IMG/VR virus record: IMGVR_UViG_3300037502_002993
Span: 156,599-220,598 of that record
Length of the DNA stretch: 64,000 nt
Reading direction: 5' to 3' (one strand)
The notes below the pieces were generated by a model. It ran no database searches, had not been told where the DNA came from, and saw only the letters and a list, made by a program, of their open reading frames with translations. The translations under genes were made by a program, and so were the position numbers. Of the stretch, positions 6,398-64,000 are shown in pieces (the stretch's first letter is position 1; every line of letters begins with the position of its first letter).

Positions 6398-9300
6398 ATG
6401 GCACAGCAGAAGTTTGATATCTTTTTTCGACGTGTGGGGATTCGTGATCGGGCCCACCTTGCCCGACCGCGTCTGTTCCCATTTGGGGAGTTCGCCTTCC
6501 CGTTTGAGAGTATCTATCACTTTAACCAGAGCAATGTGCACAATGGACCGACCCGAAACGACCCTGTACTGCAGAGCGTGGCCGGTCGTGTGTTCATTGA
6601 ACACGTCACTGAACTCTCCGCTACCGAGGGGAACCCCCGTAAGACTTCGATCAACGTTAGAATGTTGGAGAATGACTTCCGGCGCCGTAGTCGGGGCCTT
6701 CGCCCCTTGCGTCGTGATGAGGCACTGGCGATCAACCCCCGTAATCTGCTTGTTGTGAACTATGCCATGCTTTATCCGACCTACCGCTATACGGTGTCGT
6801 TTAAGGCGGAGTACTATCGCTGGGTTAACATCGCCAGTACCTTCTGGCAGCGGGTAGCGGATCTCCATCAGCGTTTCCGCTGGCATCAGTTCGTGGAGGT
6901 GGGTGTCCCTGAGCGGGTGCCTGGGTATGAGGATTTTCTTCGTATCAGTAATGGCATCACGGCAAAGTCGCTCGATGCCTTTGCCGAACCCGGTGCCTTA
7001 GACCTAGTGGATCTGTGGCAGTGGATGGGGGAGTCCCGTGAGGCGTCAAACCTCGCCAAGGTGAAAGACCCCAGTCTGGTGAACCTGATCTTCCGGGTAC
7101 GGGGTCATTTCTGTCTCATGAACCTGGGACTGATCGACCAGTGGCGCAAAGCCCCAGAGGGGGAGTTGGCCCTTGAAGGGTTTGGATTGGAAGAGTGGGA
7201 GGAGGTTGGTCAGGAGATCGCCTCACTGGAGAGTGTGCAAAGTGATATCTTAGCGCCCACTCAACTGCAACGGCTGTTTCTCGCCCTGCTAAGGCGTCTT
7301 GGGAAGGTACAGAGTGGAGAAGAGGGGGTAGCGGACCCTGAAGAGGAAGCGCCCGTAGAGCGCGCCCAGGAGGCACCTAAGCGCATTACCGTCGATCAGG
7401 GGGATGACGATCCTGAAGGTGCAACTTCATCAAGCGGTACTGTAGGGGAGGTCAGTTCGAAAAAAGAGGACGATGTTCTCTCACTGCCACCTTTAGACGA
7501 TGCGCTTAAGTTCCCTGATTTCGATCAGGAACCCGAACCCCCTGCTGAGCCTGACCCGAAAAGTGTGACCTACCGACCAGAGCGAGTCACACCCCCGCGA
7601 GAAGAGCGCCCGGTAGTGGAGAGTGATGACACTGAGGGCGATTACAGTACGGCACTTAAGGCGTATGCCGATCAGCAACTAGAAGCGGGACTGATCACGG
7701 CAGGTGCGCATAAACGGATACTGGCCGAGGCAGAACACTACAAGACGCTACCCAACCCATACGGGGATGAAGGGACCTTAGGGGAGAGTCTTGAGATCAC
7801 TCAAGAAGACCTCTCACTTGAGGATCGTGAGACCTTCCCTGACCGCGATACCATCATTGACAAATCCATGCTGAAGAGCTCTCCACGGGAAATGACCCGG
7901 AAGTACGTGGAAAAGACCCTTAAGAAAGACGTCATGAATGCCGTGTTGGCAGCGACTCAGCACCAACAGGTGGTGATCAAGCGGTATAACGTGGAAGTGG
8001 TTCATGACAACATGAATCACTTTGAGGTCCACACGCTAACCTTGAAGCCCATTCATGGTCGGCAGTCCACTGTGCGGTTTCGTCTCCCCGTGGTAGATAA
8101 AGACGGGCGTTTCATGGCAAATGGCCAGCGAAATCGGCTTCGTTTCCAGCGTGCGGATTAAAACTCTACCCTACTGTATAGTTTTTTCAGTAGAGGTAAG
8201 TGATAATGGGACAACCACTTAAGTATACAACTGAAGATTTTATTGACACAGCTACCATGATGTTCGGTGACCACCTTAGCTACGAGAAAGCCGTTTATAG
8301 GGGTAAACGTCAGCGCCTTATTGTAACATGTACGCACCACGGGGAGTTCGATGTAAACCCACTGGTGTTTCTGATGAGTACCCACGGCTGCGCCAATTGT
8401 GCTAGGGATGAAACAAAAGAACGCTTCATACGTCGTTCTTTGGAACTTCATGGTGATCGTTACGACTATAGTCTCGTTGAAGTGGACGGATATACAGACC
8501 CTGTTACGGTTGTCTGTAAAACCCACGGTGCATTCGAAACATCTATTTACGGACATTCTGTAAGGGGCAATCAGTGTCCTAAATGTTCACGAGAACGCGA
8601 CCGTACCTGCCCTAACGAGTGGATTAAAAAAGTTAAGAAGATCCACAAGGGTAAGTACGACTATAGTAAGGCAGTCTACATTCACGGTAAGTTGCCAGTT
8701 ACGATTATCTGTCCGCACCACGGGGAGTTCACCCAGCCAGCACGCTCCCACTACGCGGGACATGGATGTAAGCAGTGTCATATTCAGTTTGTTGCTAGGT
8801 CGAATAAAGAGAGATTTGTTAGGCAGGCCAAAGAAAAACATGGTGTTCAGTATGATTACAGCCGCGTAGTGTTTTTGACGACAAAGGAAAAGGTTGAGAT
8901 ACTCTGTCGTAAACACGGACCGTTCTGGGTAACCCCGAACGCGCACGCATCTAGTGGCGCGGGCTGTCCACGCTGCATTGAGTCAAAGGGTGAACGAAGA
9001 ATTAGATTATTCCTAGGGAACCATAAAGTTCGGTTTATTCAGGAATATCGGATCGAACCCTTCAGGTATAGATACGATTTCTTCTTACCTGATTACAACT
9101 GCGTAATAGAACACCATGGTGGTCAGCACTACATGCCTGTTAAACGTTTTGGAGGGGAAAAAGCCTTTAAGCAATGTGTGCAGCGAGATAAGAACAAAAA
9201 ACACATCGCAAAAAGGAAAGGGATTACTTATCGAGTCACTAACTACAAAATGATGAACAACAGCAAACTCGAAAAGAATTTAACCCGCATCCTTCTAGAA

Positions 9301-12300
9301 CTCGGTCACTCTCTCGACCACTAACCCATTATTACCTATGGTCCGCTTAAAACCCCCCTAACTGCGGGAACCTGCTAATGATGCTGTTACTACCACTTGT
9401 CGGGGGAAACCCACGGCAACACCCACTCCAGTAATGGAAGTAGTGGGCAGGGTAAAAACGTAACAGCTAGGCACAACCGACGCAACGAAGTCCCTACGTT
9501 GGTCAATCGACCAATATGGGATGTGTTCAGAGGCCATCGAAAACTACAGCTTGTTTAATGCAAGCCTAATGACACAGGTATAGAACCCTGTGGTCTCCAC
9601 GGAGATTAAAGTGAGTAGAGTAGCTGATTTCTATATCGGCGAAACGGGGGGCTTCTGTTTGCTATTCACGAACCAGAAGAAGATATGGTCCAATTTGAAT
9701 TGATTGCTTCCAATTCGTAAGATCTCTCCAAGCAGGGTTGCTCTCACCTCTTACTATAATAAAACGTTTGTCGACCGCTCTTCTCGCTCTACGAATAACT
9801 TTGCTCAATGGGTCACACGCCAAATGACCCAGATCGGACTTGATCCGGATAACGACCAGATCACTAACCTGAAGTTAGGTAATGCGTTTGATCAGTCCAT
9901 TGAAGTGCCAAGGGTTTACTCCTTGCTCTCAGCGCGCTTTACGCAATTTGCCGTAGGGCCACTACAGTTCTACTTGAGCTACCATAAACGAGCTGCTCAT
10001 TTTGAACAACATGGGATACGGGTAGAACAGGTAGAGAAAGAAGGGCGAACGGTAATCGGGATGGATCGTGAGTCATTAAGTCCCATCACGGTAGATGCCA
10101 GTGACACTTTCTATCTGGGCGATGAGCCCTTAGGTACTCTGTGTCAGGTAGTGGGACTTCCCGAAGCCAAAGCACCGCTGGATATCGCGGAGGTAGGGGT
10201 TTCCAATAAGGTCATCCCGGTGGGGTTGGTGCTGGCTTACCAGATGGGGCTGTCTAAACTCATCGAGAAACTTAATTGTGATGTGGCCAGACACCGACGG
10301 GGCAGTCGGTTTGAAATGGCCGATGATGAGTACAGTGTGGTCTTTCAGGATGAGGTGCTTGTCTTCTCGCGGTTGGATCGACGGGCCTCACTGGTGTTGG
10401 CGGGACTGAATCGCTATCACCGCGCCCTACGGCAATTCAGTGTCTGGGACTTTGATCGTAAAGACGTCTACCACAACGTCCTTCTGGATCAGGGCCTTGG
10501 GGTGCGCTACCTGCGGGAAATCGATACCCTCTTTAATGTCTGGGTTGATCCCATCACAAAAGGACTCCTGGAGGAGATGGGGGAACCCACTGACTTTGGA
10601 GGACTGCTCCTCAGAAGTGCTGACCTACTGCTACACGACCACGCTCCCAATGAGGTAGAAGGGGAGTACATGCGCTATCGGGGGTATGAGCGCATGGCAG
10701 GGATGGTCTATGGGGAGCTGGCGAGGGCCTGCAAAGCCTATCACGCGCGCAGTCACTACGGTGATGCTGCAGTGGATCTAAATCCCCACCAGGTGTGGCA
10801 GCGCATTGTGGGTGACCCCTCATCCATGATCGTGGAGGAAGCCAACCCCTTTACGGTGGTCAATGAACAGGAAATCATGACCTATCGTGGAGATGGCGGT
10901 CGTAGTGGTAAGTCCATGGTGAAGCGGACGCGTATCTACTCTGACACTGATGTCGGGGTAGTGAGTGAATCCACCCTAGATTCGGGAGATGTCGGGGTAG
11001 TGGCGTACCTGGCCCCTGATGCGAACTTCACCTCCACTCGGGGATTGACCCGACGTTACGATAAAAGTAAGGATGGCGCAGCAACCCTCCTATCCACTGC
11101 TGCACTCAATGCCCCTTGTGCGGACAGAGATGACGCCAAGAGAATCCGATAAGTTGGTTCCCCCAGCAGGTAACTGTTGGGTAAACACTCCTCTAATTGC
11201 TGGGACCTCTCGTAAGACCTTAGGTACGATCCCGTTCCGAAAGGAAGCCATGGATAGCCGGGCCTGTAAGAATCCTAAGGATAGAGACAACCATGCAGCG
11301 AAGTCCCTAAGCCTACTCAACGAGTAGGGATGGGATGTGTTCATCGACTATCGAAAGGCGCCCATTAGGGCGAACTGAGTAGAGTAGGGCCAAGCGGTAG
11401 GCCGCTAACGTGGAATGGCGTTAGTTATAAGTCCTTTAAACCGAAACGGGGAGCTTCCTACTTGTTAAGAGAGGAAGAAGATATAGTCAGTCCTTTAGCG
11501 AGAGTTAAAGGTAACCATGGAGTGGTTAGCTCGATCTAGCGAATCGGGTTTGGAAAGGGAAGGAGGATTTCACCCAATTAGGGTGATCTTCATCTGTGTA
11601 CAGCGCAACTTTATCTCAGTGCAAGCAAGACAGGGCATTTGGGCGGAAGGGTATACGGTCACGCCACTAAGGACGGGGTATGAACAGGTACTGGCCTCAC
11701 GGGTAACAGATCTGTTCGCGACCATGGCACAGCAAGATGGGAAGGTTACGTCAGTGGAAGAGAATTCCATTGTGGTGACCTATAAGGATGGGACGCAGGA
11801 GAAGGTCCTTCTTGGGAAGCGCTACGGTAAAGCCGCTGGGTATACCTACCCACAGACCTTGGTAACGGATCTAAAGGTAGGGGATAAGGTTAAGTCAGGT
11901 GGGGTGATTGCGTATAATCGTAACTATTTCATGCCTGATACCTTTAATCCCGGTCATGTGGTATTGAAAGCGGGGGTAATGTGTAAGGTGGCCCTGATGG
12001 ACCCCATCGATGCTTTGGAAGATGGGTCTGTTATCTCTGAGGAGATCGCCAAGCAGTTCACCACGCAAACCAGTGAGGTCAGGACCCTGCAAGCGCGTTT
12101 TGATCAGTCTGTCAGGGACCTAGTGAAAGTCGGCGATCATGTGGACTTGGATTCCATTCTATGCATTATTGAAGACCCGGAGATCCGCGATAATCCCCTG
12201 TTCAATGACATTGCCATGGATACCTTAAGAAAGCTCTCTTCCCACACCCCACGAGCAAAAGTGACAGGGGTGGTGAGCCGAGTTGAGGTGTTCTATCATG

Positions 12301-14417: not shown

Positions 14418-15140
14418 ATGGATGTGACCACCCTAGTGCGTGATCCGGATTATATCACACGCCACCTGGTCGTAACTGATGGGGGTGGGGTGGTCACTCG
14501 CCGCCCCACCAAGATCATGATTCCTGAACGCTACGCTGAACGCCATCTCGCCTCCCTAGGGGGCGAGACGTATATTCTCGGACTGTTTGGGATCATTATG
14601 GATGAGAAGTACTATGGGGTTTCCTTTGTGAACGCCATGGTGCGCATTACCCCAAGCTCCACCACCACAGTAGATGTTGGCGGAGATGCCTATTTGGAGT
14701 TTTCATTTGAACCAGGGGACCAGGTCATCTATAGTTTAGACCTGGTGAAGAACGACATTCTGACCTTTTACATCTACGATGAACATGTGGCGAAGGGCAG
14801 AATCCCTTGGTACATGAATTACCTAGATCTGGCCTATCTGTTTGACAGCGCCAAAGAGCATGCTGGGATGAACTTGGGTAACCGTGCTGTATTGGAGCTG
14901 ATGCTCTCCACCATTGCCCGCGACTCCAATAATGTCGGGGCGTTGTATCGCCACATCATGCAGGGTCTCACTTACGTTTACCAAATCCCCCCGAAATGGA
15001 TACCATTTAGAAGCGTGATCTGGAACACCAGTGATACCACGAGTAAATTGATCGGGGGGTATTTCAGTGATGCCGTAACGTCAGCCCTGGTCAACCCTAG
15101 TGAGCGGGTAGAGCGGATTGAGGGACTTTTGAGGACGTGA
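14418..15140 (+). CDS. Conserved phiKZ-like protein (gp176-like)
   Basis: 240-aa ORF ending ...SALVNPSERVERIEGLLRT; lies between RNAP and protease genes. Confidence 0.6.
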   Translation: MDVTTLVRDPDYITRHLVVTDGGGVVTRRPTKIMIPERYAERHLASLGGETYILGLFGIIMDEKYYGVSFVNAMVRITPSSTTTVDVGGDAYLEFSFEPGDQVIYSLDLVKNDILTFYIYDEHVAKGRIPWYMNYLDLAYLFDSAKEHAGMNLGNRAVLELMLSTIARDSNNVGALYRHIMQGLTYVYQIPPKWIPFRSVIWNTSDTTSKLIGGYFSDAVTSALVNPSERVERIEGLLRT

Positions 15141-15141
15141 T

Positions 15142-15963
15142 ATGAAAACACGCTATTTGAGGGGCACTCGTGCACAGTTAAATGCCCTAAATCTCCCTGA
15201 GGGGAATTTAGCTATTGATGTAGAAACCAAGGCTTTACGGTTCTTTGATGGAGAAACCCAAGGCGGCTTTGAGGTCCTGGGAACACGGGCCTATGAGCCC
15301 TCACCTCCTGGACCCACTGAGTTAATTGCGGGTGATTTAACCACTGGTTTTTATGGCGAGGTGGGGCCTGAGGAGTTCATCACCTACGGTGCCCTGAGTA
15401 CCTTGGTTGGGTTGAGTGCGGGGACCCTCCAGCATGATGCTGAATCCCTCTGGCTGAAGTTCTCCCTCGATGGGTCCCCGCTGTACGTCATGAAGAAGCC
15501 TGCACGACACACGGTGTCGTGGGATCAGCTGCACGCAGCGGGCCTGGTCTTTGGGACCAACACGGTGGAGGTCCAAGGACTCACCTACCAGGTCCGCCTG
15601 CTGCGCGGTGCTGCCTCCGACCCCACCACCGATGACATCGGCTTCGACATCCCCACCAGTCATGGGTCGGAGTGGAACCGGTTACTGTACCCCATCCACA
15701 GTGGGGTCCACACCAACACCAATAACCCCACGGTGCACACTGACCCCACTGCTGCGCCTTTTGGGAGCTGGGCACAGTACAGTGACAGTGATTTGGTATT
15801 ACGTGATACCGACAATGGTCGCCTCACCTGGTGTCAAGAAACCGCCGCCACCAGCACCCAGCGCGTGTATCGTGGTAATCCTGGTGTTACGACCTTGTTT
15901 CGCAATACCTCTTCGACTACGCGTTCGGATGTCGGTTGGAGAGCAGTCCTCGTGCCGGTATAA
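15142..15963 (+). CDS. Mtd-like putative receptor-binding protein (Mtd N-terminal-like domain plus C-type-lectin-like C-terminus)
   Basis: N-terminus LRGTRAQ...LAIDVETKALRFFDGETQGGF resembles the Mtd N-terminal domain; C-terminus TWCQE...RVYRG...GWRAVL resembles a CLec/FGE-fold end. Confidence 0.65.
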   Translation: MKTRYLRGTRAQLNALNLPEGNLAIDVETKALRFFDGETQGGFEVLGTRAYEPSPPGPTELIAGDLTTGFYGEVGPEEFITYGALSTLVGLSAGTLQHDAESLWLKFSLDGSPLYVMKKPARHTVSWDQLHAAGLVFGTNTVEVQGLTYQVRLLRGAASDPTTDDIGFDIPTSHGSEWNRLLYPIHSGVHTNTNNPTVHTDPTAAPFGSWAQYSDSDLVLRDTDNGRLTWCQETAATSTQRVYRGNPGVTTLFRNTSSTTRSDVGWRAVLVPV

Positions 15964-16200
15964 CGTCACCGTCACACGGACCACTCACCAGTCCGGGAGA
16001 GCGGCGTGAGTGCCCATCAGTTATCTAAGATGGGGACGAGTGCCGCTCACCAGTGGGGGCGTGCCGCATCGGGTCACTGGCGTGCCCCGCGTAAGCGTGG
16101 GGTCCCTGTGACCTGTTAACATCAACAACCACCGTAGGGGGTGGTCGAGGACTCAAGTGACGCCTTGATCCGGCCACCCTGCTCTTTGGGAGACTTGGTA

Positions 16201-16968
16201 ATGTCTATTCAGAAAAGCCCAGTGATGGGCTGTACGATGTTAGTGGGGACGACCAAGAAAGGTATCCTCGCTCCAGATGCCGACGGTTATTACCGTGTGG
16301 TACTCGGCGCTTATGGTGCGTATAACAGCGTTAACATGTTTTACGATCTCGATTCCGCCAAGCTTCTTTTCCAGTCCGGTTCCCCTTTGATGCGGATGTT
16401 GGAGAAAGGGGTATTGCGTGGAGAGTACAAGCACCCCGAGATGGAACGGGGGATGACAGAAGCTGAGTACATTCGCCGCATTCGTCAGATCGATGCGGAT
16501 CGTGTCTCCCACCATATCCGTAAGGTGTGGTTGGAGGGGGGACATAGCGATGAGAAGGGTCGTCCGGTGACGCTGGTCATGGGAGAGGTCAAACCCGATA
16601 CCGAGTGCGAACACGGACGTAGACTGAAGGCCGCACTGGACAACCCCCATGAGAACGTCTACTTCTCAGTGCGTTCACTGACTATGGACGACATGATGCG
16701 GGGAATTAAGTACACCCGTGAGATTGTCACTTGGGACTACGTCAACGAGGGGGGTATCTACAGTGCCAACAAGTACAACAGTCCGTCACTGGAAAGCTTC
16801 ACTGAAGTCCGTCTGACGCAAGAGATGGTTTATCAAGCAGTGGCGATGGAACCCAAGGCCGTTGGTATGGAGAGCGCTGACACCACCTGGAGGGGGTTGA
16901 TCCAGGAGATGGGGTGGGAGTTATCTCCCTGTAATGCCCCTGAGGTGCCGAACTATACGCAATGGTAA
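16201..16968 (+). CDS. Prohead (head maturation) serine protease (phiKZ gp175-like)
   Basis: GEYKHP (His) and FSVRS (Ser) motifs, TWDYVNEGG; C-terminal SLE/GME candidate self-cleavage sites; GGGAG SD. Confidence 0.88.
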   Translation: MSIQKSPVMGCTMLVGTTKKGILAPDADGYYRVVLGAYGAYNSVNMFYDLDSAKLLFQSGSPLMRMLEKGVLRGEYKHPEMERGMTEAEYIRRIRQIDADRVSHHIRKVWLEGGHSDEKGRPVTLVMGEVKPDTECEHGRRLKAALDNPHENVYFSVRSLTMDDMMRGIKYTREIVTWDYVNEGGIYSANKYNSPSLESFTEVRLTQEMVYQAVAMEPKAVGMESADTTWRGLIQEMGWELSPCNAPEVPNYTQW

Positions 16969-33601: not shown

Positions 33602-33735
33602 TTGACACTCCCCTAACTTCAGGGATTCCTGCTTCATCGAGCTGACTTACTCCCACTATTGCTGGAAGCAGAGGTCAATCTCCCCACAAGCATTTTAAGA
33701 GTCCGTATGCCCTACGGCCTCTGCTAAAGCCACTG
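33602..33735 (-). ncRNA. TnpB omegaRNA scaffold; predicted guide begins at 33601 (ATCCTAAAGGTGGTAGTACC)
   Basis: CCGTAGGGCATACGG...ATGCTTGTGGGGAG...CTCGATGAAGCAGGAATCCC...TCAA resembles right-end RNAs of this family. Confidence 0.75.
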
Positions 33736-33736
33736 T

Positions 33737-34954
33737 TCAAGCAGTGATGTGGTGTTCTTGGATGAACACCGCAGTCAGTGTGTTCCTCAGATGACTCGCT
33801 GGTGGGAGCATGTCGAGCGCCATGTTCCGCAGGTTGATGGCGGCATTGTGGTCTCGATCATGCTGAGTCCCACAACTGGGGCACACCCACCAACGTTGGT
33901 GTAGCTTGAGCTTGTGTTCTTTCTCTAGTCTGTGGTTACACACACTGCATGTTTGACTGCTCGGGAAGAATCTCTCTGCGATGACCACCTTGCAGTGCTG
34001 CGACTCATCGGCCTTGTAGAGCAACATGGACAGGAACTGTCGCCATCCACAGTCAGCAATGTGTTTAGCGAGTCTCCTGTTCCTGACCATGCCCTCAATA
34101 TTGAGGTCCTCAATAGCAATAGTCATGCACTGGTCTACAAGGCTTCTAGAAAGCTTGTGCTGAAAGTCCATTCGACACTGCTTGGTTTTCGCGTATGTCT
34201 TAGCGACTTTCAGCTTTTGCTTTCTGTAGTTAACACTACCTTTCTTTTTCCTAGAAAGAGAGCGTTGCGCCCTCGCCAGTCTCCTGGCATACTGCTCTTG
34301 GTATTTGGGATTGGCATACTCCTTCCCTTCTGAGTCTACCGCAAAGGTCTTGATCCCTAAGTCCAACCCCAAATGTATCTGTCCATTCGTGAGTCGGGGT
34401 TCTACTTCACAAATGAAACAAGCATAATACTTACCATCAGACTCACGAATGATACTACAGGAAGAAGGTTGGGTGGGGAGCACCCCACCCCACTTTTCGT
34501 TCTTGTAACTCCATTTAGTTTTGATAGGGGAATGCATGACTTTAGCCATGCGGAATTCCCCACTCTCCAAATCTAAGGAAAAGGCATCACCTACTAACCG
34601 AATGGATTGACGACTCTGTTTCTTTTTGAATTTAGGAAACCCAACTCTTCCTTTTCCTTTGAAAAAGGATTGGAAAGCTACCCCGAGGTCTCGTAGGGAC
34701 TGTTGCAGTGCGACCGCTGAAACATCATAGAGAAACCCATGTTCTTTCTTTAACTCGGGGAGTCTTACGACGAGTGAATTCGCACTCAGTTTGGGTTTCT
34801 CTAATGTTGGGTTTGTCTGGTAGGCTTTGTATTCCTCTTGTACCCTGTTGAGAACCTGATTCCAGACAAACCGTTTACAACCAAACGACCTCACCAGGAG
34901 GTCTTTCTGCACGACATTCGGATAGATCCGAAAACGAAATGTTTTCGTCGCCAT
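33737..34954 (-). CDS. tnpB: RNA-guided endonuclease TnpB
   Basis: FRFRIYP...GCKRFVWN, RuvC GLDLG / IEDL / DRDHNAA intact, CSVC...CPSC zinc finger; AGGAGG SD. Confidence 0.95.
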   Translation of the reverse strand: MATKTFRFRIYPNVVQKDLLVRSFGCKRFVWNQVLNRVQEEYKAYQTNPTLEKPKLSANSLVVRLPELKKEHGFLYDVSAVALQQSLRDLGVAFQSFFKGKGRVGFPKFKKKQSRQSIRLVGDAFSLDLESGEFRMAKVMHSPIKTKWSYKNEKWGGVLPTQPSSCSIIRESDGKYYACFICEVEPRLTNGQIHLGLDLGIKTFAVDSEGKEYANPKYQEQYARRLARAQRSLSRKKKGSVNYRKQKLKVAKTYAKTKQCRMDFQHKLSRSLVDQCMTIAIEDLNIEGMVRNRRLAKHIADCGWRQFLSMLLYKADESQHCKVVIAERFFPSSQTCSVCNHRLEKEHKLKLHQRWWVCPSCGTQHDRDHNAAINLRNMALDMLPPASHLRNTLTAVFIQEHHITA

Positions 34955-35064
34955 GGCTGGCCTCCTGGGGAAATGAGTTAGTCTATACATGTGGAGTCTG
35001 GCGATGCAAATCATCCTCTACCTGAAGGAGGAGGCTTTATGACCACTCCTGAACAAAGACCATG

Positions 35065-42095: not shown

Positions 42096-43286
42096 TCACC
42101 GACGCCAGTTTTCAAGACACAGTCGCACACAGCCTCGGTTCATGGTCAGAAGACTACCGTAGAAACCATGGTAGGGGGTACTGATCCAATTGACCGCCGT
42201 ACGTACTACTGACGCAATCTCCGTCAGGTGCTTCTCCTCATCAGGCGCTACACTCACCGTAGCAAGTTGTTGCGCGACCTTCTCAAGAGCCTTAATGAGA
42301 TCTTCAACTTCGCTGTTCTTGGTGTTACCGGCAAGCTTTGCGGTATTGTCGCAGAAGCTCCCCACGTCTTTCAGTAACCGCTCTGCGGTGGTGAAACCAA
42401 ACCGATTGAAATTGACCTGACTTGGGATTTTACTGAATCGCTGGGTTTCTCTTACCATCTTCACCCGAGTATGGGAGAAGGAGGCCAGTTCACCCGTCTC
42501 ACGGGTGGTAAGCTGTAACGTAAGGCTTGACAGGAGGGGATCTGAGGTGTAGGTGGTCTCACTGCCCTGTGTGCCCTTCAGGATGGATCGGTTCAGCTGA
42601 GCGGGGGTGGCGGCCGCTAGGATACTACTCACCCGTTCCACTTGAGTGGGCTGTCGCACAACGGCCTGTAGGACTGACACCAAGCGTCTCATCTCAGGAA
42701 GCAGCGTCTTGTAATAATACTCAAAGAATTTATGGGCAACGGAACTGGTCAGTTGGTAGTGATTGATCAGAATGGGAAGGTCGGTGATCGGACGGTTTCG
42801 GTGGGACAGAGCACGAACATGGGTCTTCAGCAGGAACGTATTGCCCTCAGGGGGTGGGACCCCCCGCAGCGAGGCGCGCACGCGGTTGGCCTCAAACGAA
42901 AGGACCTGAAGTTGACGCATGCTTTGAGATTCAAAGACCTGGTAGAGCCATTTCAATACCTTAGCCACCCAGGAGGCCAGTCCTTTTACCCCACTCCATG
43001 CCACGCTGCCGATGCCCTCACTGCCAATGGCGGGAAAGGTCTGATCAGGAAGATCAAACGCCGGCATGGGAGGGTAAGTCTCTAGCGTGATATCATCAAA
43101 CAATGAGGCCAATCCTACACCCCTGGGCTCGCGAGGTTGAAGGGCAATCGGCTCTCCGTGTTGATCTTTCTCCACCTTAACGGACCACGGGTCCAGCTTC
43201 GGGATGTAAAAGGCATCCAACTCTTCCTGCTTGGGAATCCGCAACTCCCCGTTCTCATCCTCAAGCCAGTGCTTAATTCGGGACAT
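42096..43286 (-). CDS. Internal head protein paralog
   Basis: ATG 43286 with AGGAGG SD; IGSEG site followed by an amphipathic helix. Confidence 0.65.
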   Translation of the reverse strand: MSRIKHWLEDENGELRIPKQEELDAFYIPKLDPWSVKVEKDQHGEPIALQPREPRGVGLASLFDDITLETYPPMPAFDLPDQTFPAIGSEGIGSVAWSGVKGLASWVAKVLKWLYQVFESQSMRQLQVLSFEANRVRASLRGVPPPEGNTFLLKTHVRALSHRNRPITDLPILINHYQLTSSVAHKFFEYYYKTLLPEMRRLVSVLQAVVRQPTQVERVSSILAAATPAQLNRSILKGTQGSETTYTSDPLLSSLTLQLTTRETGELASFSHTRVKMVRETQRFSKIPSQVNFNRFGFTTAERLLKDVGSFCDNTAKLAGNTKNSEVEDLIKALEKVAQQLATVSVAPDEEKHLTEIASVVRTAVNWISTPYHGFYGSLLTMNRGCVRLCLENWRR

Positions 43287-43374
43287 GGTATCCCTCCTTG
43301 TGACAAAAGCGGAATAACAGTCGCCCCGAAGGGCGACTGCCAGTACTGACACGTACTGCCGTAAATACGGAAGA

Positions 43375-44769
43375 TTATGCCTGAGGAGCCGGAAGGGCGC
43401 CAGCTGTACCCTCTTCCTTCTTCTCGCCGTCACCGCCTTTACCGTAGGCAGCAAGCTGTTGCTCGACCAGACGCAGTTGAGCCGCCATGGTGGAGGTGGC
43501 CAGTGCCAGACCCTTGTGGGACGGACCGTGCAGGATCTTCTTGGTGTGGGTCAGGGCCTTGATGACCAGGGACGCTGCACTGTTGGCGGCGGTGTCTTCA
43601 CCGGCACCACGGCTGGTGATGGCCTCGCCTGCGGTCTTGAGAGCACCCAGGGCTTCTTTCATGTCCGCCTTGTTGGACATGTCAGAGATCTGCTTGGAGA
43701 AGTTGGCGATCTTACTGGCGGTGCTGGCCAGTGCGGTGGGTGCCTGAATGCCCACGGGCTTCTTACCGCTCTCCACGGCCTTGGCACCGGTTACCGGATA
43801 GACACCGGTGTGGACCTTACCGATCACCCCCAGGATGGACTTGCCCTTCTCGTCCTTTTGGATCAGGGCCTTGGAGGGCAGCACCACATAGAAGGCTTTG
43901 TTGCCCGGCATGATTTGCTTGGTGCGGTAAGCCACGCTGTCTTTCCAGCGCTTACCAACTTCGTCACCAGAGACGGATTCGAACTGAGCACCCGGAGAGT
44001 AGTTGCCCAGACGCTCCACCACCTTGGCCAGGCCGTCGTAGAAAGACTCGGACTTGGGATCGAGACCGGCAGCCGCTTGTGCCAGCTCCTTGACGTAGGC
44101 GTTAGTGGCACGCACCTGATCCTGACCCACCGCGCGGGCAAAGTTCATGGCATCATCGATATCGACACCCTTGCCATCTGCGGTAATGCCGGCGGTGTCC
44201 ACCTCGATGCTGTTCTTGCTGGCAGTGCCTTTGGTTGCAGCGGCTTTCGCGGCGACTTTGGTGGCACGCTGGTGCAGGCGGAAGGCACCGTCAGTGATGG
44301 TCTTGGCAATCTCTTTGGCCTTCTCGGCGATAAAGGCGAGCAGACGCTTGAGTCCTTCCCACAGTTTGGTCAGGGTATTGCCGCCCTCTTCGAGGGACAC
44401 CTGAGTGGCGTGCAGCTGAGAAGAGGTACCGCCGAAGGATTCGACAGAGGCGACGATGGGCTTCTCCAGACCGAGCTTCTGCTCCCAGGACTCGATACCC
44501 ACTCGGATGGCAGCAGCGGTCATCGGGGTGATGCCGCCGTTCTCGGCACCCAGCTGCATCAGCTCAACGTAGCCTTCGATGGCGGCGTGGGCTTCCACCA
44601 GGTCGTTGTAGTCACGATCGGCCTCGTCCAGAGACTCGACGGCGGCATGGATCGGCGCCATGATGTCGCCAATGTTCTCAGACTCAATGGAGACGTTCTC
44701 CAGGTCAGCGTCGGTGAAACCCTCAAGAGAGCCGGTTTCGAGGTACTTGCGAGTTGCTTGGGTCAGCAT
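43375..44769 (-). CDS. Abundant internal head (inner body) protein, gp93 family
   Basis: Many S/A/G-x-E sites in the first ~130 aa; strong codon bias. Confidence 0.75.
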   Translation of the reverse strand: MLTQATRKYLETGSLEGFTDADLENVSIESENIGDIMAPIHAAVESLDEADRDYNDLVEAHAAIEGYVELMQLGAENGGITPMTAAAIRVGIESWEQKLGLEKPIVASVESFGGTSSQLHATQVSLEEGGNTLTKLWEGLKRLLAFIAEKAKEIAKTITDGAFRLHQRATKVAAKAAATKGTASKNSIEVDTAGITADGKGVDIDDAMNFARAVGQDQVRATNAYVKELAQAAAGLDPKSESFYDGLAKVVERLGNYSPGAQFESVSGDEVGKRWKDSVAYRTKQIMPGNKAFYVVLPSKALIQKDEKGKSILGVIGKVHTGVYPVTGAKAVESGKKPVGIQAPTALASTASKIANFSKQISDMSNKADMKEALGALKTAGEAITSRGAGEDTAANSAASLVIKALTHTKKILHGPSHKGLALATSTMAAQLRLVEQQLAAYGKGGDGEKKEEGTAGALPAPQA

Positions 44770-63756: not shown

Positions 63757-64000
63757 TCGTATGGCGAAGATTCACGGCTCTCTCTTTTCTCATGCCTTGT
63801 CAGTAACCCCTCTTTTAAAAGGAGTCCCTCTTAGGGAATGCTGACCAGACTCTGCCCTACCTTAGGGTGGGGTTCCGTTCATTAGGTGATCTTACCCAGG
63901 GGTGGCCGAACCAGCCCCTGGCTCTAAGGTGCGTCGTTAAAAGTCCTGTGAGGTAGGGGCGGTGCGGCGTGCATGACAAGCCTTTTGAACATTGTCGAGG

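What the first reader, a model, noticed from the sequence alone, without database searches (positions are those of the whole stretch)
15142..15963. Mtd-like protein whose 3' end resembles a DGR variable region, with no RT or template repeat seen nearby
Seen: N-terminus resembles the BPP-1 Mtd N-terminal domain and the C-terminus has a CLec-like pattern (W...RVYRG...GWR). Between RG and GW most non-scaffold codons end in C/T (AAT CCT, ACC, TTT CGC AAT ACC TCT, ACT, CGT, GAT GTC), interspersed with ACG/TCG/TTG. Known: DGRs mutate adenines of AAY codons, giving NNY codons at such positions. Inference: a remote DGR target or DGR-derived tropism module in a phiKZ-like phage. NNY bias alone is weak evidence.
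Basis: partly seen in the sequence, partly recalled or inferred. Interest (0 to 1): 0.7.

Follow-up and report, generated by a model that had tools for sequence, protein, structure and literature searches.

The report
Retroelement-diversified virion gene, reverse transcriptase lost
The gene is a real target of a diversity-generating retroelement (a system that rewrites the tip of a binding protein through an error-prone reverse transcriptase) in a phiKZ-like giant phage, but in this genome the reverse transcriptase and most of the template have been deleted, so the five diversified genes appear frozen.

Summary
Window 15142-15963 encodes a 273-aa Mtd-like protein: a weak Mtd_N N-terminus plus a C-type-lectin fold. 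Solved Mtd structures are the best PDB matches.

Its last 26 codons (15862-15939) are a DGR variable region (VR). The 220.6-kb genome holds four more paralogs with the same VR scaffold. These differ almost only at the first two bases of 12 codons.

A related strain carries the intact template repeat (TR). Against it, 74 of 117 adenine sites differ in seven VRs, versus 16 of 363 other sites.

The cassette lies outside the window, downstream of paralog E at genome 114.4-115.0 kb. It has a bAvd-like gene, then the TR's upstream flank and first 27 bases. The homology then stops. Related strains continue with the predicted TR, and one has 1404 bases where this genome has 180. No RT was found in the contig.

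The nearest IMG/VR relatives carry complete target-Avd-TR-RT cassettes at family members. The phage is phiKZ-like, with a chimallin homolog.

Verdict: a canonical DGR in a lineage where I found none reported, caught as a natural RT-deletion variant with five orphan VRs.

The parts
15142..15963 (+). Paralog A of a five-member family of DGR target genes; 273-aa virion-type protein with Mtd-like architecture
   Evidence: Intact ORF. PHROG virion structural protein families at E = 1e-41 to 1e-18. Paralogs B-E at 65-84% aa identity elsewhere in the genome. Model pLDDT 92.9 with Mtd as best PDB match.
15142..15290 (+). N-terminal Mtd_N-like domain (about residues 1-50)
   Evidence: Pfam PF18454 E = 0.48 for residues 7-39. 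The same domain is significant in 21/40 homologs. The VIA-align match to Mtd starts at residue 3.
15290..15960 (+). C-type-lectin / FGE-like fold domain carrying the VR at its C-terminal end
   Evidence: Structural matches: TvpA 2Y3C Z 7.5, PvdO, FGE, TaqVP 5VF4 Z 6.1, snake and NK C-type lectins. Homologous to the N-terminal 212 aa of phiKZ gp83 (29% identity, E = 4e-22).
15862..15939 (+). Variable region (VR): the stretch homologous to the template repeat, CGC GTG ... GGT TGG
   Evidence: blastn places the related-strain TR (L115 384-462) on window 15861-15939; the coordinates given here start one base later, on the codon boundary. The codon-by-codon match runs from codon R241 to W266. Scaffold codons are identical in all five paralogs, with no synonymous change.
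15868..15933 (+). The 12 diversified codons: Y243, N246, P247, T251, F253, N255, T256, T259, T260, R261, D263, V264
   Evidence: These vary only at codon positions 1-2 among paralogs A-E and strain copies L012 and L013. They correspond to AAC/AAT/ACN codons in the TRs of L115, run X6 and relatives G1/G2.
15940..15963 (+). 3' flank of the VR, where an IMH would sit, plus the stop codon
   Evidence: It encodes R-A-V-L-V-P-V*. The nucleotide sequence (AGAGCAGTCCTCGTG...) does not match the TR's 3' flank (CGTGCCGCTCTGGCC). Paralog B does match the TR there. This is unexplained.
15937..16051 (.). Two imperfect long hairpins just 3' of the VR (15937-15990 and 15996-16051); the same palindromic element follows paralogs C, D and E
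   Evidence: DNA fold of -27.3 kcal/mol, z = -2.7 against shuffles. The element is shared downstream of the paralogs. A role as the DGR target-recognition hairpin is inferred only.
14418..15140 (+). Upstream neighbour: conserved virion structural protein (phrog_2926)
   Evidence: PHROG E = 4.5e-88. In relative G1 its ortholog directly abuts the protease ortholog, so gene A is an insertion here.
16141..16968 (+). Downstream neighbour: phiKZ-type prohead protease (Peptidase_S80)
   Evidence: Pfam PF20034 E = 3e-86; phrog_3014 head maturation protease.

Best explanation
Window 15142-15963 encodes one of five paralogous virion proteins (A-E) of a nucleus-forming, phiKZ-like jumbo phage. Each paralog ends in a C-type-lectin domain whose last ~26 codons are a variable region of a diversity-generating retroelement.

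Shown:
- All five VRs share one scaffold.
- They differ at the positions that are adenines in the template repeat.
- The cassette lies downstream of paralog E (genome 116207-115278, minus strand) and consists of a bAvd-like gene (115034-114687) followed by the TR.
- In this genome the TR stops after its first 27 bases, at genome 114624.
- Related strains have the rest of the TR. One has 1404 bases where this genome has an unrelated 180-nt segment.
- No RT was found in the contig.

Inferred:
- In the ancestor and in RT-bearing sister strains, the RT with Avd copies the TR RNA into cDNA with random bases opposite adenines. The cDNA then replaces the VRs of the adjacent gene and of remote genes such as gene A, changing 12 surface residues of the lectin fold and hence ligand specificity.
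- In this strain the system is dead and the five VRs are frozen at their last state.
- The deletion is probably recent, because avd is still intact and the five VR scaffolds are still identical.
For: Paralogs and pattern.
- Paralogs B and D are 98.4% identical over 312 nt upstream of the block but 81% in the VR.
- Variable sites at codon positions 1/2/3 are 11/8/2 in the VR versus 31/28/58 upstream.
- Only one of the 43 invariant bases in the block is an adenine.

TR identity:
- ENA contig L115, from a related strain, is 87% identical to our avd region. The alignment ends exactly at genome 114624.
- L115 carries avd followed by a TR whose AAC/AAT/ACN codons sit at our variable codons.
- 74/117 A sites are changed versus 16/363 non-A sites. 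The non-A changes fall in two codons that contain adenines in other TRs of the family: the ACT codon kept in our own remnant, and the last variable codon, AAT/TAT in G2 and L117.

Deletion:
- In run X6 the sequence after ...GGTAATACTGGT continues GTTACGAACTTGAATCGCAATACCTCTTCG, exactly the TR I had inferred from the VRs.
- In run X4 a 2328-nt contig has 1404 letters in place of L003 651-830.
- In source run X1 one 2248-nt contig, at phage depth (85.8), spans the junction with no differences and no alternative.
- A TR with both flanks also appears as loose ends in X4.

Avd: Pfam bAvd E = 1.5e-5, and 34% identity to the Avd of relative G2.

No RT: Pfam RVT_1 six-frame search, an RT-motif scan, and tblastn with three DGR RTs (best E = 0.17).

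Relatives:
- G1 and G2 have complete target-Avd-TR-RT cassettes next to the orthologs of paralogs F-E and next to an A-like gene. TR/VR mismatches fall only at adenines.
- Their RTs carry LGNLTSQ and YADD.
- Each TR has one adjacent and one remote VR.

Fold.

Between-strain turnover: the D-locus ortholog L013 is 98.4% identical in its flank but about 84% in the VR. The X4 ortholog of gene A has 24/128 differences over the VR versus 6/203 in the adjacent flank.
Against: - The RT of the closest strains (X4, X6) was not read directly. That the 1404 letters hold an RT is inferred from their length and from the orthologous cassettes in G1/G2.
- CheckV rates the contig 74% complete. Its 120-nt terminal overlap also occurs inverted at 94954-95073, so closure is not certain and a second cassette could lie in unsampled sequence.
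- Only assembler contigs, not reads, were available, so a minority RT-bearing genotype in the source sample cannot be excluded.
- Gene A and paralogs C, D and E do not share the TR's nucleotide sequence 3' of GGTTGG, whereas B does. Canonical homing needs such identity, so how A was targeted is unexplained.
- The virion location of the protein is unknown. The phiKZ homolog gp83 is annotated as a head protein.
Confidence: 0.82

Rival explanations
1. The DGR is still active on gene A. Either a full TR and RT exist in a part of the phage genome missing from this contig or in a minority genotype, or they are supplied in trans by a co-infecting RT-bearing sister phage.
For: CheckV gives 74% completeness, and the terminal overlap coincides with an internal inverted repeat. 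avd is intact and the VR scaffolds are undecayed. RT-bearing sister strains exist in other samples. Relatives G1/G2 carry two cassettes.
Against: The syntenic site of the second G2 cassette is empty in this genome: the flanking orthologs are 235 nt apart. Only one avd was found and no further TR-like copy. All large syntenic blocks of G1/G2 map inside the contig. VR-containing unitigs in the source run are at full phage depth and contiguous with unique flanks, which argues against strong VR heterogeneity.
Confidence: 0.12
2. The truncated cassette is an assembly artefact: a chimeric join inside the TR caused by its similarity to the five VRs.
For: The paralog region is highly repetitive and Logan contigs break there.
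Against: Two assemblies agree, the IMG/VR contig and the Logan contig of run X1, with 0 differences over 1336 nt across the junction at normal depth. The 180-nt replacement segment is unique and is contiguous with the next gene. The breakpoint lies inside the TR at a spot where k-mers differ from every VR.
Confidence: 0.04
3. No retroelement was involved. The paralogs diversified by ordinary mutation, gene conversion and positive selection on a binding loop.
For: Gene conversion among paralogs could homogenise scaffold codons.
Against: The variable positions coincide with the adenines of real TRs found next to avd in sister strains and next to RTs in relatives (p = 3e-40). A TR fragment and an avd gene lie in this genome.
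Confidence: 0.02

Closest known systems
Bordetella phage BPP-1 DGR (Mtd target, bAvd, TR, Brt)
   Same: The gene order is target-Avd-TR-RT in relatives and target-Avd-TR remnant here. The target has an Mtd_N-like N-terminus and a C-type-lectin fold, with the VR at the extreme C-terminus ending just before a conserved G-W-R. TR AAY codons give NNY codons in the VR. There are inverted repeats 3' of the VR.
   Different: Sequence identity to Mtd is only about 15% over the structural alignment. The protein is shorter than Mtd's 381 aa. There are five dispersed targets rather than one. The host phage is a 220-kb nucleus-forming jumbo phage rather than a 42-kb temperate podophage. The RT and the 3' part of the TR are deleted in this genome. 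Gene A lacks TR identity 3' of the VR.
Multi-target DGRs with remote VRs (surveyed, from my own recollection, by Wu et al. 2018 and Roux et al. 2021)
   Same: One TR serves an adjacent target and paralogous targets tens of kilobases away. In relatives G1/G2 each TR has one adjacent and one remote VR.
   Different: Here there are five VRs for one TR, in a virus, and the cassette itself is inactivated while all targets remain intact.
phiKZ gp83 and the homologous 'virion structural protein' domain of PhiPA3 gp080, 201phi2-1, SCTP-2 and Erwinia jumbo phages
   Same: The lectin-like domain is homologous, including the RG...GWRP end (29% identity, E = 4e-22 to gp83; 168 phage records by tblastn).
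   Different: No RVT_1 hit was found in 13 of the 15 related IMG/VR jumbo contigs searched. Paralogs in one of them (G003) share no common VR scaffold. I did not search the cultured phages themselves for an RT. gp83 is 504 aa, carries the domain at its N-terminus and is annotated as a head protein.
Treponema denticola TvpA and Thermus TaqVP (DGR variable proteins, FGE-type C-type-lectin fold)
   Same: Same fold class by structure comparison (Z 7.5 and 6.1).
   Different: Those are bacterial lipoprotein or cellular targets. No sequence-level family match: no FGE-sulfatase Pfam hit.

Membership tests
Diversity-generating retroelement (DGR) system | A DGR-clade reverse transcriptase (RVT_1 with the I/LGxxxSQ motif) encoded with the TR | tested here: not met
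   None in the 220.6-kb contig: RVT_1 six-frame search, motif scan, tblastn with three DGR RTs. Present 1-2 kb downstream of family members in relatives G1/G2 and in L116/L117, with LGNLTSQ and YADD. So this genome holds a decayed DGR, not a complete one.
Diversity-generating retroelement (DGR) system | A TR/VR pair whose mismatches fall at TR adenines | tested here: met
   Against the sister-strain TR (L115), 74/117 A sites differ versus 16/363 non-A sites over seven VRs. A 30-nt TR stretch from run X6 equals the TR inferred from the VRs. The genome's own TR survives only as its first 27 bases.
Diversity-generating retroelement (DGR) system | Accessory variability determinant (Avd) between target and TR | tested here: met
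   A 115-aa ORF at genome 115034-114687. Pfam bAvd E = 1.5e-5 (below the gathering score) and 23S_rRNA_IVP E = 2e-4. It is 34% identical to the Avd of G2 cassette 1 and in the same position.
Diversity-generating retroelement (DGR) system | An IMH-type sequence shared by VR and TR at the 3' end, followed by a hairpin | tested here: inconclusive
   Paralog B and strain copies L012 and L013 share 9-11 nt with the TR after GGTTGG. Gene A and paralogs C, D and E do not. Long imperfect hairpins follow every VR.
Diversity-generating retroelement (DGR) system | Ongoing VR diversification within a population | not testable with these tools
   Only assembler contigs of the runs were available, which drop rare variants. 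Between-strain VR turnover with conserved flanks is seen.
Mtd-like DGR variable proteins | Mtd_N N-terminal domain | tested here: inconclusive
   E = 0.48 and 10.8 bits against a cut-off of 26.3 for this protein. 21 of 40 homologs match, best E = 1e-10. The structural match to Mtd begins at residue 3.
Mtd-like DGR variable proteins | C-type-lectin fold with the variable residues in its C-terminal part | tested here: met
   Model pLDDT 92.9. Mtd variants are the top Foldseek hits (E = 1e-4) and give VIA-align Z 8.1-8.5, followed by TvpA, FGE and TaqVP. Z around 8 is only moderately above the background stated by the tool.
Mtd-like DGR variable proteins | Trimeric receptor-binding tip of a tail fibre | not tested
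   No oligomer prediction or localisation was done. The phiKZ homolog gp83 is annotated as a structural head protein.

The most novel reading that the evidence does not exclude
DGRs operate in nucleus-forming (chimallin-encoding) jumbo phages on up to five dispersed virion lectin genes, so RT-Avd and the TR RNA or cDNA must reach phage DNA enclosed in the protein shell. RT-less strains such as this one would keep intact VRs and avd because co-infecting RT-bearing kin can still rewrite them in trans. That would make the retroelement a shared good in the phage population rather than a dead remnant.
Probability: 0.12. Interest if true: 0.75.

Novelty: new member of a known kind. Interest (0 to 1): 0.55.

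Why it matters
DGRs are the only known natural system of targeted protein hypermutation in prokaryotes and their viruses.

A 2021 comparative survey of 224 jumbo phages reported no FGS/C-type-lectin DGR-type domains in them (PMC7824862). My searches of the held library found no report of a DGR in phiKZ-like phages.

This locus shows three things:
- A clade of uncultivated chimallin-encoding phages uses canonical DGRs on a lectin-like virion domain that cultured phiKZ-like phages also carry, for example phiKZ gp83.
- One TR can serve five paralogs spread over 130 kb.
- Natural strains differ by presence or loss of the RT.

That gives a ready comparison of frozen and active repertoires. It also raises a concrete question: how can retrohoming work on DNA sequestered in a phage nucleus?

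Practically, RT-anchored DGR screens would miss this genome entirely, although it holds five hypervariable genes.

Tried and rejected
- **TR in the own genome.** blastn at word size 7 and regular expressions with N at the variable sites found only the five coding copies. The truncated remnant was recognised later by synteny.
- **Scaffold pattern in IMG/VR.** One hit whose NN positions were AA/AA, but the flanks were unrelated, so I judged it chance.
- **Scaffold pattern in JGI metagenomes and GTDB genomes.** Two true strain copies (L012, L013) and four chance hits. No TR and no host-encoded cassette.
- **megablast of the locus against GenBank phages.** No match.
- **Read-level hypervariability.** Not possible, because all the runs laid (X1-X4, X6) are held as assembler contigs.
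- **Fetching the intact cassette of the nearest strain through Avd or RT homologs.** Only a 601-nt contig with avd and TR was found (L115). The nearest RT homologs (L116, L117, 48-50% identical to the G2 RT) belong to other phages with no DNA similarity to this one.
- **Second avd or second cassette remnant in the genome.** None.
- **Origin of the 180-nt replacement segment.** No similarity to anything fetched.
- **Orphan VRs in the RT-less relative G003.** Its paralogs share no common scaffold, so no.
- **TR/VR frame.** I first misaligned the 5' end of the TR and suspected a 2-nt indel. In the correct frame (CGT GTG AAC CGT GGT) there is none.

Full report
**The observation.** Window 15142-15963 (+) is an intact 273-codon ORF. 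It lies between a conserved virion structural gene (phrog_2926) and a phiKZ-type prohead protease (Pfam Peptidase_S80, E = 3e-86). On its own the protein hits Pfam Mtd_N only at E = 0.48. It does hit PHROG families of phiKZ-like virion structural proteins at E = 1e-41 to 1e-18.

**What kind of phage.** The window is bases 156599-220598 of a 220,598-bp IMG/VR virus record. It encodes split RNA-polymerase beta subunits, a phiKZ-type major head protein, a DnaB-like helicase and the S80 protease. Outside the window there is a homolog of the phiKZ nuclear-shell protein chimallin (36% identity, E = 1e-88). So it is a phiKZ-like, presumably nucleus-forming, jumbo phage. It has no near relative in GenBank. 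Sister strains occur in subsurface, freshwater and sludge metagenomes.

**Five paralogs with a DGR signature.** The 3' part of the gene recurs four more times in the genome at 79-92% DNA identity. The copies are:
- B: 43265-44089 (+)
- C: 136443-137276 (+)
- D: 152288-151452 (-)
- E: 116207-115278 (-), which has a different N-terminus

There are also more distant paralogs, F to I.

In a codon alignment the paralogs differ upstream mainly by synonymous third-position changes. In a 22-codon block (window 15868-15933 in gene A) the pattern changes:
- Twelve codons vary, almost only at positions 1 and 2.
- The ten scaffold codons between them show no change at all.
- Variable sites by codon position are 11/8/2 in the block versus 31/28/58 upstream (p = 6e-4).
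- Only one of the 43 invariant bases in the block is an adenine.
- Paralogs B and D are 98.4% identical over 312 nt upstream of the block but 81% inside it.

This is what repeated overwriting from one template with adenine-specific randomisation predicts.

**The template and the cassette.** No sixth copy and no RT were found in the genome at first. The break came from relatives. The two closest IMG/VR contigs, G1 and G2, are the same phage from two samples, and their family members are about 50% identical to gene A. They carry DGR-type RTs 1-2 kb downstream of family members. The gene order there is target-Avd-TR-RT. TR/VR mismatches fall only at TR adenines, and the RTs have LGNLTSQ and YADD. 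Each TR also has one remote VR. One of these cassettes follows the orthologs of our paralogs F and E. Its TR ends ...TCG AAT ACG AAT TCG AAT AAT GGT TGG. That is our VR scaffold with A at our variable positions.

In our genome, paralog E is followed by a 115-aa ORF (115034-114687). It matches Pfam bAvd at E = 1.5e-5 and is 34% identical to a G2 Avd. After it comes the conserved TR upstream flank and then CGT ATG AAC TGT GGT AAT ACT GGT, the first 27 bases of a TR.

**The deletion.** Homology with sister strains stops exactly at genome 114624.
- ENA contig L115 (87% identical across avd) continues with a complete TR: cgt gtg AAC cgt ggt AAT tct ggt gtt acg AAC ttg AAT cgc AAT ACC tct tcg AAT ACG AAT tcg AAT ctt ggt tgg. 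This is followed by cgtgccgctctggcc.
- In run X6 the contig continues with the 30 bases GTTACGAACTTGAATCGCAATACCTCTTCG, identical to the TR I had inferred from the VRs.
- In run X4 a 2328-nt contig has 1404 letters where our genome has 180 (genome 114444-114623).
- In source run X1 a single 2248-nt contig, at the phage's depth, spans the junction with no difference and no alternative end.
- An X4 contig with the TR and both of its flanks had already appeared as loose ends on gene A.

The 1404 letters fit the rest of the TR, a spacer and an RT of about 350 aa, as in G2. I could not read them, so that step is inferred. tblastn with three DGR RTs finds nothing in the genome (best E = 0.17). There is only one avd. 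The syntenic site of the second G2 cassette is empty.

**Quantitative test.** I compared the L115 TR with seven VRs: A to E plus strain copies L012 and L013. 74 of 117 adenine positions are substituted, against 16 of 363 other positions (Fisher p = 3e-40). The 16 exceptions fall in two codons that contain adenines in other TRs of the family: the ACT codon kept in our own remnant, and the last variable codon, AAT/TAT in G2 and L117. Gene A keeps 10 of its 17 A sites, the most template-like of the five.

Between strains, the VRs turn over while the flanks stay put:
- The D-locus ortholog L013 is 98.4% identical in its flank but about 84% in the VR.
- The B-locus ortholog L012 is 95.3% identical overall, with the mismatches crowded in the VR.
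- The X4 ortholog of gene A has 24/128 differences over the VR against 6/203 in the adjacent flank.

**The protein.** More than 120 metagenomic homologs share the end ...RG..G[VI][ST]-variable-GWRP.L.L. Of 40 aligned, 21 hit Pfam Mtd_N. An AlphaFold model built on that alignment has pLDDT 92.9. Its best PDB matches are the five Mtd variants (Foldseek E = 1e-4; VIA-align Z 8.1-8.5 over residues 3-273). Next come PvdO, TvpA (Z 7.5), FGE enzymes, TaqVP and animal C-type lectins. These Z values are moderate, but the ranking is coherent.

The domain is homologous to the N-terminal 212 residues of phiKZ gp83 (E = 4e-22) and occurs in 168 GenBank jumbo-phage records. gp83 is annotated as a structural head protein. 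I therefore treat the tail-fibre tropism role as inferred by analogy with Mtd, not shown.

**How it most likely works.** In RT-bearing strains, the TR RNA would be reverse-transcribed by RT-Avd with misincorporation opposite adenines. The cDNA would replace the VR of paralog E and of the remote paralogs, including gene A 57 kb away. This randomises 12 residues (Y243 to V264) on the lectin surface.

In this genome the RT and the 3' two-thirds of the TR are gone, so the repertoire is frozen. avd is intact and the scaffolds are undecayed, which suggests a recent loss. VR-containing unitigs in the source sample sit at full phage depth, consistent with monomorphic VRs.

**Caveats.**
- CheckV gives 74% completeness. 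The 120-nt terminal overlap also occurs inverted at 94954-95073, so closure is not certain. However, all large syntenic blocks of G1/G2 map within the contig.
- Gene A and paralogs C, D and E do not share the TR's nucleotides 3' of GGTTGG. B, L012 and L013 do. How these four were targeted is unexplained. A second, lost TR or a relaxed requirement are both possible.
- Long hairpins follow every VR, but their role is not shown.

**Novelty.** The system is a canonical DGR, so this is a new member of a known kind. The setting is new as far as I could find. A survey of 224 jumbo phages reported no such domains (PMC7824862), and searches of the library for DGRs with jumbo, phiKZ, huge phages or Chimalliviridae found no report. 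Of 15 related IMG/VR jumbo contigs, only G1 and G2 have RTs. The RT-less G003 shows no shared VR scaffold.

Noticed in passing
window 33622-34987 (ORF 33737-35014, minus strand); also genome 34020-35173, 50071-51486, 92550-93956: Four TnpB paralogs (OrfB_IS605 plus Cas12f1-like TNB domain) at 82-85% DNA identity in the phage genome. A 126-140-nt element repeated seven times appears to be their left end. Downstream of paralog B this genome has a TnpB-less mini-element where sister strain L012 has the full copy.
   Followed up: partly
window 6398-8161, 8200-9324, 9704-11152: One RNA-polymerase beta-type gene (phrog_3148) is split into two ORFs, with a 374-aa DUF723 ORF between them. This may be a homing-endonuclease-type insertion.
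   Followed up: no
window 15138-16141: Gene A and its 177-nt downstream region are an insertion. In relative G1 the orthologs of the two flanking head-module genes abut each other. The paralog family therefore spreads within the genome together with its downstream palindromic element.
   Followed up: partly
genome 1-120, 220479-220598 and 94954-95073 (outside the window except its last 120 bases, window 63881-64000): The 120-nt 'direct terminal repeat' of the record is also present as an exact inverted copy inside a 1-kb paralogous region (76% identity). The circular closure and the relative orientation of the two arcs may be assembly-dependent.
   Followed up: partly
window 15940-15963 versus paralogs C, D, E: Gene A ends ...AVLVPV*, while C, D and E end ...AVLVPILDN*. 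The difference is a deletion of about 62 nt between short direct repeats. The X4 strain's ortholog of gene A has the longer form.
   Followed up: partly
L003 1-648 (genome 113794-114441, minus strand): The gene just after the truncated cassette encodes a DUF4376 protein, a domain common in phage tail-fibre-associated proteins.
   Followed up: no
genome 29820-31598 (outside the window; L119): Homolog of the phiKZ nuclear-shell protein chimallin (36% identity, E = 1e-88), which places the phage among nucleus-forming jumbo phages.
   Followed up: yes
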